From: Stylophora pistillata
Taxonomy: Eukaryota
NCBI RefSeq assembly: GCF_002571385.2
Contig: NW_019217847.1
Coordinates: 47,599 to 111,598 of the forward strand
Direction: 5' to 3'
DNA length: 64,000 nucleotides
Below the pieces are notes generated by a model. It did not search any database. It had not been told where the DNA came from and saw only the letters and a list, made by a program, of their open reading frames with translations. Shown here in pieces: positions 58,456 through 64,000 of this stretch. Within the stretch, counting starts at the first letter, position 1. Each line of letters starts with the position of its first letter. The translations under genes and the position numbers were made by a program.

Positions 58456-60115
58456 AGTGATCAAGGTGCTTGGTTTAATCAAGTTGCTTCGGACTTGCTT
58501 GCAAAAAAGTATTGTCCCGGTCCATGATAAATTTATCTTCAAGGTGAACATTTCTCGTGCAGATCTCTTGATCCGATAATTCGATAACTATCGTTAATCT
58601 CCACCCAGTGTGGTCCTTGCACATGATGTGTTGGAAAGTAGAAGTGTCAAAATTTGGTCGTGCACGTTTTCCAACATGATGTGTTGGAAAGTAGAAGTGT
58701 TAAAATTTGGTCGTACACGAGGATTTTCCTCGTAATGAGGATGTGTGTTGGGAATTGTTTCCTCTATTAAAATACCCTCAGAGGTGTTTACATTAATGTT
58801 GCATTAGCAGTGCTTGGTTGGTTTTTCCGCTTCAAAATTTATTTTAATCTCACATGAAACTCTTCAAATTAATTTCAATAAACTTGATGATACTTCAGCT
58901 CATTTTTCAAGCACTGCTAATGCTGATAAACACTGTTTGTGCTGTTGTACTTAGAAGAGTTTTTGAATACACTGAACATAGAAATTCTTACTTCTTATAA
59001 CCGCACAATGTTCTCATGTCTCGTGAGTCTAACCTGAGTTTTCCTATTTTTTCTCAAATAAAACTCGGAAATCAACGGCCAGCTAATGTATTTTTGAGCA
59101 AATAATGTGGTCAAGTCTGTATGTGTGTATTGGTTCTGATTCTTTGCGCTGCCGTCAGTTTTACATGTTCTCTTTTCAAATATTACTGTGCGTTTGGATC
59201 GAACCAAACATTGTTGGTTACGTGAATTATCCATACGATCTACACCTCCCCTTAATTTCAGTATTAATAGAAATGCAATGTGTTTGATATAAAAATGATA
59301 TCAAGTTTTCGAGTCCCCAATTCACCGAAAAAAGAATGAATCGAATTTCGATCTTTCGACGGTCTCTTTCTTCTTCTCCGCAATACTTTATTTCTTCCGG
59401 GCGATCCTGAATACAAATGCAAATAATAAACGCACTACTAAAATGGTTAAAAAATTGGATAAAAGATATTCTTCGTCGGTGGGTGTTTACATCGAAACAA
59501 CTTAACTCTTAGGCTGTTTATTTTCACTGGAATATTATGAAAAATGACAATAAAGCTTTTTAGAAAGACAACAAAACCCAAAAAACGCCAAAATAAAGCA
59601 AAGGCATTCAAAGACTGAGCATCGGTTTATTTTGACAAGCCGACCTGCCAAACATTACATATTAATGAGATTCTATGTCTTTCAGTCATTAAAACTAATT
59701 GCGCGCATATCACGGTAGGCAAAGGTCGTAAAAAAAGTGAATTCTGAGAACTAACATGTCGTTTAAATCCGAAGAGTCTACCCGGCTAATATTTTTTAGT
59801 AGTTCCTACAACAAATGTCATTGAACATCGGTATTAAACAATTTTTTTGTAGCACCTGTTCCAGAAAAGACTAGCGATATCTCAGTAAGTCTCAGCTGAA
59901 TTAATAATTTACTTATTAGGTACTTTGTGTGCAAGAAAGCTTACCAGCCAGTATTGTTCTTGCAACATCTTCCGCTCAGTGGGCATGTTACACTTATATT
60001 TACTAAGTCACGGAAAAATTCGTTGTTTTCTTTGGTCGAGCAGGACCTCTGATAAGAGGAGGATCTAACAGAAATTATCAACCCCAGACACGTTTTTTTC
60101 AAATAAGTATCTGAG

Positions 60116-63100
60116 ATGCTGCAGCTGCATGTAATGTTCAGCATCGAGGTAAAGTTGTATTTATTTCTTCTTGGTACATCAGCGGCGACCAGTGTGGCTT
60201 CTTACCCAAACTGTGACCAGCTCTCGTCAACCGAGCTAAGTTTTGACGTAGAATACTGGGAGACAAGCCCATATACAAGTTGCCGAGACACAAAGCAGAT
60301 GAGCTTGCAGTCCTGTGCAGAGGGTTAAGTATAAATATCATGATTCTAAATACATGTAGTTGTTGACACAGAAGAAGATGACACAGAACAATCTGACTCC
60401 GCAGAGCACGGCCCCCAACACATTTGAGTGTGTATTAACAACACGTTTGCGCAATACGATCAATTCCGTTTTAGTAGCTTTTTGTTTTAGGATGCAAAGA
60501 AACTTCCCAAGATCACTTTCCTCCTTGAATCTATGTTTTTATACTCATTTGGGTTAATTTTAACCTTGAAATGACAAAAAAAAAAAAAACAAGCCGGATC
60601 TGTAAATCGGATACTTGTGATGGAAAATTAATCCTGAGCCGGCTTCTAGGTGACAAAATTTCAACGAAAATAATTACAAATGTCGGTCTTCCTGTTTATA
60701 TGCACAGGAAGCGAAAAGAAAACACCAAGACAAAGCCTTTAATGTAACTGAGAACTCTTTATTATTATTATTTTTTGGGAGGATAGTTTGTTCCCTGGAG
60801 TGTGGTGTTTAATACACGGTTTGCGCTCGATTCAATGCTTAAAACAAGCTAAGTACAGTTATACAAGCCCACGTAAATGCCATCAAAATAACTTGCATTG
60901 CGAAGAACAAAAAGAGATTTTCGTATTTTTTCTACAGATACAGTTCATTAAAACTGTCACTCGACAGCAATTTCTTTTTCAGTTTGAAAGTAGGTCTTTG
61001 TTCACTAAAGGAAAATACGAAATAGGTATTGTTTTGTAAATTTTATACGATCTAAAACAAAAACTGTTAATCGCAGAGTTATGCAAAGCTCAGGCAAAGT
61101 AGATGCTATTGAATATCACTCCAAATTTATGAAAAAAGATTTTTTGGAATTACTATAATATTGCGGTTTTGACTTAGAAAGATATAAGCCTAAAATGCTA
61201 CGATCCTAAATTTTCGTTTTTATGTTTTCATAGCGAATTGCAAGCGAAGAACTCTCACACTGTGAGAAGTATGACAGCTGGCCAAAAAGATAAAATAAGT
61301 ATGACCAAGACAACTTAGAACGCTAGTTTTTACTTCCCACCCCTACTCCGTTAATTAGGGACCTTAATTCGATTAAAAAATGAATTTCTACTCTTAGTTA
61401 GAATTTCAAAAATGATTGCAGGAGCTTACTGTCTTATACGGCGCCACAGCTCAACTTCAGCATGACGTATAAAAGTAGCGTTGAGTTCCAAATGGAAATT
61501 AACATAATTTGCCGTCGCGGTTTCGGTTCGCAGACGACGCAAATTTTGGCGATTTCACGTTGTTGTTTTGCATGGGACGGCTAAGAAATGTACAAAGTTT
61601 CAAAATGCACGTCCCGAGCTATTGTTCAGCCAATTAGATTTCTTGTTTTTCCACGTCCTCGTTGCCGTCGCCGTTGTGGTTGCGTAAGGTCCCTTGAAAA
61701 TAGTAGTGCTACATTGCTGCTAGTCTAGTACCCAGACCTTTTACGGTCAAGCGGTTGTACATTTCAGTTACAATTACACGGTAGGATACATACAAACATA
61801 CATACATACATATACTTTATTTAATCTCGAATTTGGAGTAGCTAAAGAATAAGCTAGTATCTTCGAGTTACAAGTATAATTCTAAATACTACTAAAATGT
61901 AAAATGTAAAATTGTAACATTCTAAAATTTAACTATGAGAAAGAGTCATACTGTAGAATCTTGCGCTTGAAATCAGAAAAGTCAGACGTTCTAAAAGAGT
62001 CCGGAAGAGAGTTCCATAGTTTTGAAGCCATATATGAAAAGGAGTGAAGACCATAAGTAGTAGTTTTTGTAGACGGTAGAGACAAAATATAATTTCCGCG
62101 TAGATTATAGGATACAGACCGGAAACTAAACATATTCTTTAGATAGCCTGGATAGCAGTTAAAAAACAAGGTCTTGTACAATATGATCTGGTTACAAGAT
62201 TAGGTTCCAACTACTGTTAAATACCAAATGATATTCACCTTCTTTACCTCATCCCAGTTAATAACATAGTAAGCAATGCGTGAAATCAAATTCTATTGCC
62301 CCAGCCTACTCCATATTCCGATTGTGCACGCTGAAATGCATTGATATGGGAATTTCTCCCTAAGAAAAAAATTGAATCGACTACCACGTTGAAATTCAGT
62401 ATTAGCAGGTTCAGAACGTGCTATGCGTTTATCGAGAAATTTTTATGGAACTTCAAGTTGGAGCTCTTCAAACTTTCCGCATTCTATATATCTCGCTGAG
62501 TGCACGTCAACGCATGAACACAGCTGTCAATTTTCCTCAAATCCCTTTCTCAGATGAGAACCTGTTTAGCCAACTTCCAATAAGATCTACGAACTTAACA
62601 GGAGGATAAAAAGGGGCAATAAAGCACCTCTTCGATTCTGAAGGAGATTCTTCAGTTTTAGTGAGTGACCCAAGCATGCTCGTATTTTTTAAAACCTCAT
62701 CTCTATCGATCTTTGCAGCCGGCTTCCTTGGTACATTCCTTCGCCAGATGATCAAGCCCTCTAAAATTTCCTTCAAACCAACTGAGAAAAAATTCCAAAA
62801 GACTTCTTCGAATAACACTCAAAATGTAACCATTGCCATACCTTTTATGATAAAAAGGAACACGGACGATCCATGTGAGATTAAAGTACATCACTCCAAA
62901 GGACCAGCCTACATTGCTAAGAGAAACCGGATGAAGCCATTGGAACAACTTGGAGGCTCGTTTATTAACGGAGGACAGATTATCGGTTTGACCCTCATCC
63001 TCACGGTTATATCCGGGGTCTTTATATGGATACTAGTAAGTGACTTACACCATGCAAATGCGTCAGGCAAACAAATTTACTTTAAATTTGATTTATTTTT

Positions 63101-63683
63101 GTATTGTCTTTAGCTGACACACGGAAAGGGAAAAAAGCCTGATTATTCTGCTTCTAAATGGCCCAATTTTGCAGCCAATTAGGTCGCGACATGGACTGGC
63201 TCGTACTCGTCATGTATTTTGTTGTATAGCACGTAAATGTAACATCTCTTTCAACAGGATCGCCATAAGAATCCGGTGGACTTTCCCCCTTCGTTCATCA
63301 GTGGTTCCTGGCAGGGCTTTTGGTGGGCTTTCGTGACAATGACTACTGTTGGGTAGATAGCATTCATTGCCTTTAGATATTGTCATAAAGTTGTAAATTT
63401 CATATAAAAAATGTGTAATAGTAGTTATTATAAGAATAATAATGATGGTGATGATATCGATTTATTTAATTATATGATGGTAATAATTACGATAATTGTG
63501 TACTTACATGCAGTAGTTGATGTCTGTAGGTATGGAGACACATCTCCCAAGTCCGTGCCAGCTCGTTTATACAGTATTTTGTGGATGTTGTTGGGCATGG
63601 TCGCCTTCTCAGTTCTTACAGCCAATGTCACGAGTTCTTTGAATTATGAAATTGAAGAAGACTTGAATCTATTTGGCAAAACG
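60116..63683 (+). CDS. Partial GluR0-like K+-filter ion channel; exons 60116-60323, 62719-63035, 63258-63352, 63530-63683, continuing beyond the window
   Basis: Signal-peptide exon, about 150-aa ectodomain, TM (IIGLTLILTVISGVFIWIL), pore GFWWAFVTMTTVGYGD, TM ending FSVLTANVTSSL. Splice phases 1, 0 and 2 are all consistent. Confidence 0.82.
61357..61694. mobile_element. Degenerate MITE in the channel intron
   Basis: Ends AGGGACCTTA and TAAGGTCCCT, with CGTCGCCGT-type repeats. Confidence 0.5.
61787..62190 (-). mobile_element. LINE 3' fragment with (TATG)n tail
   Basis: YKTL...YNLRG...TTTYGLHSFSYMASKLWNSLP is a typical CR1/L2 ORF2 C-terminus. Confidence 0.8.
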
Positions 63684-64000
63684 GTAAGCGCCGTTTTGTA
63701 TCGTCCTGTGGCAATATTTGCCGAACAGTGACATTGATTGAAAAAACTTTTAACGGCACGCAGATCTGACCATCATCAAAAGCCGATAGTTAAAATCTCT
63801 GATTCCATTCTACTTTTTTCAAGGGGTGATTGCTACCAAAGCCTTTTAAGCACAGTCAATAACATCGATCTATCCGTTGACTACCAAAATTTCAACTAAT
63901 TAAATAAAAATAATAGCATCCCGTACAGAATCTGCGCTACTGTTTCTCAAAATGTTCTTAAGATGAACATCTTGAAATGATTCAATGTCTGGCGAATAGA

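What the first reader, a model, noticed from the sequence alone, without database searches (positions are those of the whole stretch)
60116..63683. Intron-containing animal gene for a GluR0-like, signal-peptide-bearing K+ channel
Seen: the spliced product runs hydrophobic leader, ectodomain (starts FDVEYWETSPY, ends HSKGPAYIAKR), TM, NPVDFPPSFISGSWQGFWWAFVTMTTVGYGD, then a TM ending VLTANVTSSL. No S1-S4 voltage sensor precedes the pore. Known: TVGYG is the K+ selectivity filter, SYTANLAAF is the iGluR M3 gating motif, and the cyanobacterial GluR0 combines a signal peptide, a split periplasmic-binding domain and an inverted K+ pore. Typical animal iGluRs lack an intact GYG filter, and animal Kv/Kir/K2P channels lack signal peptides. 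Inference: this is an inverted-topology, possibly ligand-gated K+ channel, i.e. a candidate inhibitory chemosensory or neurotransmitter receptor family in cnidarians. Its introns argue against bacterial contamination.
Basis: partly seen in the sequence, partly recalled or inferred. Interest (0 to 1): 0.85.

Follow-up and report, generated by a model that had tools for sequence, protein, structure and literature searches.

The report
Coral glutamate-receptor-like potassium channel gene
This is a real, expressed coral gene for a channel built like a glutamate receptor (outer ligand-binding clamshell, inverted pore, extra membrane helix) but with a textbook potassium-channel filter; it belongs to a large, old animal family that I could not find described and that may be ligand-gated inhibitory receptors.

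Summary
The four exons in the window are the first half of an 8-exon gene, Stylophora pistillata LOC111324830 (531 aa, P0027). The gene runs about 3.7 kb past the window end.

RNA contigs confirm the exon 1-2, 2-3, 3-4 and 4-5 joins. They also show an unspliced 5' UTR of at least 324 nt with an in-frame TAA, so no upstream voltage-sensor exons exist.

The protein reads: signal peptide, S1, M1, pore helix with TTVGYGD, M2/M3 (TANVTSSL), S2, a further helix (M4), cytoplasmic tail.
- A profile of 50 animal relatives aligns end to end (S1, pore, S2) with bacterial GluR0-type channels (hhalign 100%, E 8e-53).
- In the AlphaFold model, S1 and S2 together superpose on the GluR0 ligand-binding core (Z 18.8, 208 of 221 residues).
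- The whole model matches AMPA/NMDA/kainate LBD-TMD structures.

The family has at least 24 paralogues in this genome. It occurs across Cnidaria and in hemichordates and annelids.

The arginine that binds the alpha-carboxylate of amino acids is not conserved, so the ligand is unknown and probably not a classical amino acid. K+ selectivity and ligand gating are inferred, not shown.

The scan met paralogues of this family before on other DNA of this genome. I found no paper describing the family.

The parts
59792..60115 (+). 5' UTR, contiguous with exon 1 (minimum extent), holding an in-frame TAA at 60104-60106
   Evidence: RNA contig X6 record 8 lies unspliced on L020 592-1122, which is window 59792-60322. 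The sequence itself was read.
60116..60323 (+). Coding exon 1: start codon, signal peptide (about residues 1-28) and start of S1 (FDVEYWETSPY = first strand and PY motif of lobe 1)
   Evidence: ORF and GT donor. P0027 residues 1-69 match at 100%. The joint to exon 2 is seen in RNA. The VxW...PPY/GI motif is conserved in the family.
60324..62718 (+). Intron 1 (2395 nt). It holds a high-copy interspersed repeat at about 61200-62200.
   Evidence: The joint skips it in RNA contigs. The repeat has at least 1926 candidate copies at 94-97% identity.
62719..63035 (+). Coding exon 2: rest of S1 (ends HSKGPAYIAKR), the pre-M1 linker and helix M1
   Evidence: Translation. P0027 match. Joints on both sides in RNA. 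Model helix 141-176.
63258..63352 (+). Coding exon 3: cytoplasmic M1-P linker (DRHKNPVDFP), pore helix, and TTVG of the filter
   Evidence: The motif is shared with the bacterial GluR0-type consensus ERRxNPxxF...GFWWSAVTMTTVGYGD.
63530..63683 (+). Coding exon 4: YGD of the filter, inner helix M2 (= iGluR M3) with SVLTANVTSSL, and start of the M3-S2 linker
   Evidence: Pfam Ion_trans_2 and Lig_chan hit this exon alone. P0027 match. Joints in RNA.
63684..64000 (+). Start of intron 4; the gene runs off the window. Remaining coding exons, in L004 coordinates (add 60000 for window-equivalent positions): 4028-4091 (S2 start), 6116-6384 (S2), 6711-6885 (end of S2, M4), 7369-7679 plus stop at 7680-7682 (cytoplasmic tail).
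   Evidence: tblastn of P0027 on L004. Sequence read. The 4-5 joint is seen in RNA.

Best explanation
The gene encodes a subunit of a tetrameric, glutamate-receptor-superfamily channel with an intact K+ channel selectivity filter.

Shown here:
- It is a genuine, spliced, polyadenylated coral transcript.
- The product reads: signal peptide, S1, M1, P-loop (TTVGYGD), M2/M3, S2, M4, cytoplasmic tail.
- S1+S2 are predicted to form a complete periplasmic-binding-protein type II clamshell.
- The protein is homologous along S1, pore and S2 to bacterial GluR0-type channels.
- The family is old, large and under selection on the filter.

Inferred:
- The signal peptide puts S1 and S2 outside the cell, so the pore is inverted as in iGluRs and GluR0, with the filter facing the cytoplasm and the M3 gate facing outward.
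- An extracellular small molecule closes the clamshell and pulls the M3-S2 linkers. The gate opens and K+ leaves the cell, which hyperpolarises it. This would make it an inhibitory ligand-gated receptor.
- The S2 acidic residue (D305) and the Ser/Thr (S265) are kept, but the S1 arginine that holds an alpha-carboxylate is lost. The ligand is therefore probably not a classical alpha-amino acid. It may bear an amine.
For: - Gene structure and expression.
- No voltage sensor; three TM helices plus a P-loop.
- Pfam Ion_trans_2 (51 bits) and Lig_chan (33.1 bits, above the 30.8 cut-off) on M1-P-M3.
- hhalign of 50 animal against 42 bacterial GluR0-type proteins: probability 100%, E 8.2e-53, 322 columns, query 38-381 against template 32-364 of 370.
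- AlphaFold model: mean pLDDT 80, mostly above 90 over residues 31-370.
- Foldseek best hits are all iGluR LBD-TMD chains (GluA2 8vj6_A, E 1e-10; GluN1; GluK2) over 420-476 columns.
- VIA-align: GluR0 core 1ii5 at Z 18.8, rmsd 3.0, 208 of 221 residues; Nostoc GluR0 2pyy at Z 18.7; AvGluR1 4io2 at Z 17.6; GluA1 LBD-TMD 8p3t_B aligned over model residues 42-429, which includes M4.
- Y208, G209 and D210 are invariant, and T204, T205, V206 and G207 are at least 90% conserved, in 50 relatives.
- D305 is D or E in 48 of 50 relatives, and S265 is S or T in 45 of 50.
- N-glycosylation sequons lie in S1 and S2. The segments before M4 are acidic and those after it are basic.
- Paralogues carry CUB, Ig or FN3 domains in front of S1. 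These are extracellular domain types.
- The Nematostella orthologue has a canonical signal peptide ending ALA.
Against: - No function was measured.
- The arginine that binds the ligand carboxylate in iGluRs and amino-acid-binding proteins is not conserved: R in at most 2 of 50 at the aligned column.
- No member hits SBP_bac_3 or Lig_chan-Glu_bd in Pfam on its own, so the clamshell could be degenerate.
- A K+ signature does not guarantee K+ selectivity.
- The basic pre-M1 segment (5 K/R) does not fit the positive-inside rule.
- The signal peptide was judged by eye and hydropathy only; its Kyte-Doolittle maximum of 1.5 is modest.
- The model is a monomer, so the relative position of LBD and TMD is uncertain (rmsd 10-14 A to whole iGluR chains).
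Confidence: 0.6

Rival explanations
1. Same architecture, but the clamshell no longer binds a small ligand. The protein would be a constitutively active or otherwise regulated K+ channel. The regulator could be a protein partner, a co-receptor subunit as with insect IR co-receptors, the cytoplasmic CxxC tail, or contact through added adhesion domains in paralogues.
For: - The canonical arginine is lost.
- No single-sequence SBP hit in any of 50 members.
- Paralogues have CUB/Ig/FN3 N-terminal domains, and earlier notes report adhesion-type domains, which suggest macromolecular partners.
- The cytoplasmic tail is conserved, with CxxC and PLDGFxxIGxQLxxIPGVS motifs.
Against: - The clamshell fold is complete and confidently predicted, with 208 of 221 GluR0-core residues aligned.
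- The pocket residues D305 and S/T265 and the G301 hinge-side motif are conserved across roughly 25%-identical paralogues. This is not expected for a vestigial domain.
- The lobes diverge fast between paralogues while the pore stays fixed, as in chemoreceptor families.
Confidence: 0.2
2. A ligand-gated channel that is only weakly K+-selective or non-selective for cations despite the TTVGYGD signature. It would then be excitatory or shunting rather than inhibitory.
For: - The rotifer AvGluR1 is cited as an iGluR with the K+ signature and properties intermediate between bacterial and eukaryotic receptors (PMC12332018; details from my memory of Janovjak et al. 2011, a paper not held here).
- Other channels carry a GYG signature yet are poorly K+-selective (PMC9614928, title and abstract as listed).
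Against: - The pore helix and filter (GFWWAFVTMTTVGYGD) are nearly identical to Shaker's, and Shaker pores are the best PDB sequence matches (E 4.6e-15).
- The filter is invariant or nearly so across 50 relatives.
- GluR0, which has the same filter, is K+-selective (Chen et al. 1999, as cited).
Confidence: 0.15
3. An ordinary-topology K+ channel (Kv-like fragment or 2TM channel) with unrelated flanking domains, a misassembled gene model, or bacterial contamination.
For: - Some database names call relatives 'Potassium voltage-gated channel subfamily F member 1, partial'.
- The best PDB sequence matches are Kv pores.
Against: - There is no S1-S4 and no upstream exon.
- Seven spliceosomal introns, four of them seen spliced in polyA RNA.
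- Orthologues follow the anthozoan species tree.
- The flanks are homologous to S1 and S2.
Confidence: 0.03

Closest known systems
GluR0 of Synechocystis and the bacterial 'group 1' K+-filter glutamate receptors (SBP_bac_3 + Lig_chan + Ion_trans_2; Chen et al. 1999; Ger et al. 2010, PMC2950845)
   Same: - Collinear S1, M1, P, M2, S2.
- TTVGYGD filter.
- Shared motifs (D/E)RxxNPxxF after M1, GFWW(A/S)xVTMTTVGYGDxAP, and S.FTAxxTSSL in the inner helix.
- No amino-terminal domain.
- Profile-profile E 8e-53 and Z 18.8 to the GluR0 core.
   Different: - It has a fourth helix (M4) and a cytoplasmic tail of about 100 residues.
- It is an intron-rich animal gene.
- The S1 arginine of the T.T.ER motif is not conserved.
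- Lobe 1 is diverged enough that Pfam SBP models no longer see it.
Eukaryotic ionotropic glutamate receptors (AMPA, kainate, NMDA, delta, epsilon, plant GLRs, insect IRs)
   Same: - LBD-TMD layout with M4; signal peptide; inverted pore.
- Foldseek best hits are all iGluR LBD-TMD chains.
- Lig_chan scores above Pfam's cut-off.
   Different: - An intact K+ filter instead of the Q/R/N-site pore.
- No amino-terminal domain.
- Only TAN of the SYTANLAAF motif is kept. The inclusion rule of the main metazoan survey (at least 4 residues; PMC6307864) would have excluded it.
- At sequence level it is far closer to the bacterial K+-filter group than to the iGluRs in the PDB.
[quoted passage not shown] 2011)
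   Same: - An animal iGluR-type protein that carries the TXVGYG signature (as described in PMC12332018).
- Its LBD superposes on the model at Z 17.6.
   Different: - AvGluR1 is described as having the full eukaryotic iGluR architecture and binds glutamate.
- Here there is no amino-terminal domain and the arginine is missing.
- Only 7% identity in the structural alignment, against 14% for GluR0.
Shaker-type Kv channels
   Same: Pore helix and filter are almost letter for letter the same (FWWAxVTMTTVGYGD); best PDB sequence hits.
   Different: No voltage sensor, no T1 domain, opposite predicted orientation, and extracellular clamshell halves flank the pore.

Membership tests
iGluR superfamily (Pfam Lig_chan PF00060 architecture) | Bilobed PBP-II ligand-binding domain whose two halves (S1, S2) flank the channel segment | tested here: met
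   hhalign covers S1, pore and S2. The model's residues 38-373 superpose on the GluR0, AvGluR1 and GluK1 cores and on amino-acid-binding proteins at Z 16.9-18.9.
iGluR superfamily (Pfam Lig_chan PF00060 architecture) | M1, re-entrant loop and M3 matched by the Lig_chan model above its curated cut-off | tested here: met
   33.1 bits against a cut-off of 30.8 for P0027. 49 of 50 relatives hit at E <= 0.01.
iGluR superfamily (Pfam Lig_chan PF00060 architecture) | Additional transmembrane helix M4 after S2 (eukaryotic members) | tested here: met
   Hydrophobic stretch around residues 393-411 within model helix 391-429. GluA1 LBD-TMD aligns with the model through residue 429. Homology of this helix to iGluR M4 is not proven.
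iGluR superfamily (Pfam Lig_chan PF00060 architecture) | SYTANLAAF gating motif in M3 | tested here: not met
   The sequence is SVLTANVTSSL. Only T, A and N coincide. The family consensus is SVFTAxxTSSL, which matches the bacterial S.FTAxITSSL.
iGluR superfamily (Pfam Lig_chan PF00060 architecture) | Conserved arginine in S1 that binds the ligand's alpha-carboxylate | tested here: not met
   P0027 has R116 at the aligned column, but the column is E/K/S/L/T... in the other relatives, with R in at most 2 of 50.
iGluR superfamily (Pfam Lig_chan PF00060 architecture) | Extracellular LBD and inverted pore orientation | tested here: inconclusive
   In favour: the signal peptide, sequons in S1/S2, charge pattern around M4, and CUB/Ig/FN3 domains ahead of S1 in paralogues. 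No topology predictor or experiment was available.
iGluR superfamily (Pfam Lig_chan PF00060 architecture) | Current gated by an extracellular ligand | not testable with these tools
   Needs electrophysiology.
GluR0-type bacterial K+-selective glutamate receptors | TXVGYGD K+ filter within an S1-M1-P-M2-S2 protein | tested here: met
   TTVGYGD at residues 204-210. Y208, G209 and D210 are invariant in 50 relatives. End-to-end profile match.
GluR0-type bacterial K+-selective glutamate receptors | Two transmembrane helices only; the protein ends after S2 | tested here: not met
   M4 plus a cytoplasmic tail of about 100 residues follow S2.
GluR0-type bacterial K+-selective glutamate receptors | Glutamate/amino-acid binding pocket (T.T.ER arginine; S2 Ser/Thr; S2 Asp) | tested here: inconclusive
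   The S2 residues are kept (S/T in 45 of 50; D/E in 48 of 50). The S1 arginine motif is lost.
Voltage-gated K+ channels (Shaker/Kv) | S1-S4 voltage-sensor domain before the pore | tested here: not met
   Only a signal peptide and the S1 lobe precede M1. RNA shows no upstream coding exon.

The most novel reading that the evidence does not exclude
This gene belongs to an undescribed, ancient animal family that dates at least to the cnidarian-bilaterian ancestor. The family would be ligand-gated K+ channels that are the surviving intermediate between bacterial GluR0 and animal glutamate receptors: M4 already gained, amino-terminal domain not yet added, K+ filter still intact. With dozens of paralogues per cnidarian genome and fast-evolving clamshells that have lost the amino-acid arginine, they would act as inhibitory chemoreceptors or transmitter receptors for non-amino-acid ligands.
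Probability: 0.35. Interest if true: 0.9.

Novelty: new variant of a known kind. Interest (0 to 1): 0.75.

Why it matters
Textbook accounts derive animal glutamate receptors from a fusion of a binding protein with an inverted K+ channel. The known witnesses are bacterial GluR0 and a single rotifer receptor.

A large, conserved animal family that keeps the K+ filter, already has M4 and lacks the amino-terminal domain would give that account living intermediates that can be cloned and recorded.

It would also add a fast, ligand-gated K+ (hyperpolarising) receptor class to animal signalling. At present, fast inhibition is attributed to Cl- channels.

For coral and sea-anemone biology, it offers dozens of candidate receptors for environmental or symbiosis-related chemicals. 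The gene has a Nematostella orthologue (LOC116610353), which makes it genetically tractable.

Tried and rejected
- Pfam on single exons found only the pore.
- Exon 2 and exon 6 as single-sequence queries find no paralogue in the own genome, although the family profile finds many.
- phmmer of the S2 exon against the PDB gave only a chance hit.
- Pfam on all 50 members gave no SBP_bac_3 or Lig_chan-Glu_bd hit. The clamshell is visible only to profile-profile and structure comparison.
- Two wrong-frame translations were corrected.
- The exhaustive protein search with exon 2 returned mostly exon-sized fragments, but it yielded the full-length entry points P0009 and P0013.
- Eight literature searches, including six RefSeq locus names and six phrasings for 'GluR0-like / K+-selective iGluR', found no description of the family. 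Janovjak et al. 2011 and Lomash et al. 2013 are not held, and subscription journals are not covered.
- Rfam on the highly expressed part of intron 1 found nothing. That part is a genomic repeat.
- Contamination, a Kv fragment and a gene-model artefact were considered and rejected (see rivals).
All whole-protein steps used the database protein P0027, which tblastn shows to be identical to the eight exons.
- I did not run complex prediction. Tetramer formation is assumed from homology.
- The quick tree has SH-aLRT support only, holds no eukaryotic iGluRs, and is rooted on the bacterial sample by assumption. It says nothing on whether the family is sister to iGluRs.
Full report
**Where it is.** The window is G000:C64:47599-111598, a 956,391-bp contig. 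A database protein seen on a contig of exactly that length is named 'uncharacterized protein LOC111324830 isoform X2 [Stylophora pistillata]' (P0027). I fetched the DNA beyond the window end as L004 (L004 position = window position minus 60000) and L020 (L020 position = window position minus 59200).

**Observation.** Reading the sequence gives four exons with consensus splice sites and fitting phases: 60116-60323, 62719-63035, 63258-63352 and 63530-63683. TVG|YGD is split by intron 3.
- Downstream I found by eye, then confirmed, four more coding exons: L004 4028-4091, 6116-6384, 6711-6885 and 7369-7679, followed by a stop.
- tblastn of P0027 on L004 matches all eight exons at 100% where exon-limited. 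The total is 1593 nt, or 531 codons.
Whole-protein analyses use the database protein P0027.

**Transcription and the 5' end.** Seven runs on record as RNA hold part of the locus. I laid three polyA-RNA contig sets and one raw-read run on L020. The joints seen were:
- 1122->3521 (exon 1 to exon 2; two contig sets, plus one raw read)
- 3835->4058 (exon 2 to exon 3)
- 4151->4329 (exon 3 to exon 4)
- 4482->4827 (exon 4 to exon 5; all four runs)

The exon 1-2 joint is displaced by 3 nt because the sequenced individuals lack 3 nt at L020 3519-3521. Unspliced contigs of the same runs show the same deletion, so this is an allelic in-frame indel (AEAGF against AEGF), not a different acceptor. One contig runs unspliced from L020 592 into exon 1, which gives a 5' UTR of at least 324 nt. 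A TAA sits in frame four codons before the ATG. Raw reads over the exons have their first mate on the minus strand, as expected for a plus-strand RNA in a standard stranded library. There is therefore no upstream coding exon and no voltage sensor.

**Architecture.**
- Hydropathy gives a modest N-terminal hydrophobic segment (signal peptide, cleavage near TSVA|S) and three strong TM segments, at about 155-175, 220-243 and 393-411.
- The Nematostella orthologue has a canonical signal peptide ending ALA.
- Pfam sees only Ion_trans_2, Ion_trans and Lig_chan on M1-P-M2. Lig_chan scores 33.1 bits, above its 30.8 cut-off.
- N-glycosylation sequons fall in S1 (N101, N105) and S2 (N263, N342, N382). 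The segment before M4 is acidic and the one after it is basic.

**Relatives.** The exhaustive HMMER search with exon 2 gave full-length homologues. Word-indexed searches with the Nematostella orthologue P0013 and with a hemichordate member P0050 followed.
- *Orthologues.* They occur across Hexacorallia and Octocorallia.
- *Paralogues.* Many paralogues of 450-570 aa occur in Anthozoa, Scyphozoa and Hydrozoa. Some versions carry CUB and Ig or FN3 domains ahead of S1.
- *Bilaterian members.* Three hemichordates (Glandiceps, Saccoglossus, Ptychodera) and two annelids (Dimorphilus, Owenia) have members.
- *Next-best hits.* These are bacterial proteins with SBP_bac_3 + Lig_chan-Glu_bd + Lig_chan + Ion_trans_2, the GluR0 type.
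- *Database names.* Animal members are called 'uncharacterized', 'Potassium channel domain-containing protein', 'Cubilin' or 'Kv subfamily F, partial'.
- *Count in this genome.* A profile search of the coral's own genome finds 24 full and 4 partial S1 exons, with matching pore, M2 and S2 exons. They are often in tandem clusters (contigs C22, C298, C238, C384, C201, C409). This count is a lower bound, since 88 of 337 candidates were scored.

**Homology to GluR0-type channels.** I aligned 50 animal members (A1) and 42 bacterial members (A2).
- *Shared motifs.* The consensus sequences share (D/E)RxxNPxxF after M1, GFWW(A/S)xVTMTTVGYGDxAP, and S.FTAxxTSSL in the inner helix. They also share VGVLxGS and GxLxD in S2 and PPY/GI in S1.
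- *hhalign.* Probability 100%, E 8.2e-53, 322 aligned columns. P0027 residues 38-381 align with template positions 32-364 of 370, which is the entire bacterial protein.
- *PDB by sequence.* Against PDB sequences the animal profile hits Shaker pores best (E 4.6e-15). It also hits the GlnPQ substrate-binding domain with its S2 part (6h30_A, profile positions 248-378, E 2e-10).

**Structure.** I built the AlphaFold2 model on A1 only, leaving out bacterial rows so that they could not impose the fold. It has mean pLDDT 80, with values mostly above 90 over residues 31-370 and for M4.
- Foldseek's best matches are all iGluR LBD-TMD chains (GluA2, GluA1, GluN1, GluK2) with 420-476 aligned columns. TM-scores are low, which reflects the uncertain LBD/TMD orientation in a monomer model.
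- VIA-align superposes model residues 38-373, skipping the channel insert, on several structures:
  - GluR0 core 1ii5: Z 18.8, rmsd 3.0 A, 208 of 221 residues.
  - Nostoc GluR0 2pyy: Z 18.7.
  - Glutamine-, arginine- and cysteine-binding proteins: Z 17-19.
  - AvGluR1 LBD 4io2: Z 17.6.
  - GluK1 LBD 1ycj: Z 16.9.
  - GluA1 LBD-TMD 8p3t_B: aligned with the model through M4, to residue 429.
- Language-model features (ESM Atlas) point the same way. After the family's own cnidarian clusters, the nearest clusters are Lig_chan families of diatoms and plants, bacterial GluR0-type proteins, IRs and iGluRs (a lead only).

**Pocket and pore conservation.**
- Y208, G209 and D210 are invariant, and T204, T205, V206 and G207 are at least 90% conserved. 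This indicates selection on a K+ filter.
- In S2, S265 is S or T in 45 of 50 relatives, G301 is G in 47 of 50, and D305 is D or E in 48 of 50. From general knowledge of iGluR and SBP pockets (not tested here), these are the positions that hold the ligand's amino group and distal groups.
- In S1, the bacterial T.T.ER motif has no counterpart. The aligned column holds R in P0027 but E/K/S/L/T in others.
- The clamshell is thus kept and constrained, but it is not a classical alpha-amino-acid site.

**Evolution.** I built a quick maximum-likelihood tree of 48 animal and 20 bacterial sequences.
- Animals and bacteria separate (SH-aLRT 100).
- The orthologue group of this gene recovers the anthozoan species relationships: (Stylophora, Oculina), (Montipora, Acropora); Nematostella with (Actinostola, Actinia); Octocorallia outside.
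- The hemichordate and annelid sequences fall into one group (94), sister to a cnidarian subfamily.
- This fits vertical descent from at least the cnidarian-bilaterian ancestor, with paralogy older than that split and many later losses.
- The tree contains no eukaryotic iGluRs, so the position of the family relative to them is open.

**Mechanism (inference).** By analogy with GluR0 and iGluRs, four subunits would form an inverted K+ pore. Ligand-induced closure of the extracellular clamshell would pull on the M3-S2 and S2-M4 linkers and open the outer bundle crossing. K+ efflux would then hyperpolarise the cell. The conserved cytoplasmic tail (CxxC, PLDGFxxIGxQLxxIPGVS) may serve trafficking or regulation. 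None of this is measured.

**Known or new.** Reviews up to 2025 name only bacterial GluR0 and the rotifer AvGluR1 as glutamate receptors with the K+ signature (PMC12332018; PMC12226733). The main metazoan iGluR survey excluded sequences with fewer than four SYTANLAAF residues (PMC6307864), a rule this family fails. Eight searches found no description of the family; the call numbers are listed under Tried and rejected. The library lacks most subscription journals. The scan itself met paralogues of this family on four other stretches of this genome, with the same reading. These are AI notes, and I re-derived the claims here independently on this locus.

**Verdict.** The corrections are that M4 is present, the family is wider than Cnidaria, and the arginine is lost. 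Function remains inferred.

Noticed in passing
window 61200-62200 (intron 1; L020 2000-3000): This stretch has RNA contig depth of 10^3-10^4 on both strands, with many loose ends and an inverted joint. It is a high-copy interspersed repeat: at least 1926 candidate copies, and the 40 scored copies are 94-97% identical over 295 nt. That suggests a young mobile element. There is no Rfam match.
   Followed up: partly
window 62719-62721 (L020 3519-3521): In-frame 3-nt deletion polymorphism exactly at the start of exon 2. It is seen in unspliced contigs of two runs and in spliced contigs of two runs. The product reads AEGF instead of AEAGF.
   Followed up: partly
window 60120 (L020 920): One RNA contig (depth 6) reads T>C in codon 2 (CTG to CCG, Leu2Pro). 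This is probably an allele or an error.
   Followed up: no
G000 contigs C22:531-596 kb, C298:320-365 kb, C238:92-133 kb, C384:105-193 kb, C201, C409, C1294: Tandem clusters of paralogues that share the same intron positions around the pore (profile positions 184/185, 216/217, about 270, 289). In most paralogues S1 is a single exon, whereas in this gene it is split in two.
   Followed up: partly
L004 7369-7679 (cytoplasmic tail, beyond the window): The tail is conserved among anthozoan orthologues. It has a CxxC pair (EEMCEECRAKVEHI) and a PLDGFxxIGxQLxxIPGVS motif. There is no Pfam match, pLDDT is low, and the function is unknown.
   Followed up: no
L020 3966-4151 (window 63166-63351): The 2075-nt RNA contig of run X9 starts 92 nt inside intron 2 before exon 3. 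This is either partial intron retention or simply the contig's end.
   Followed up: no
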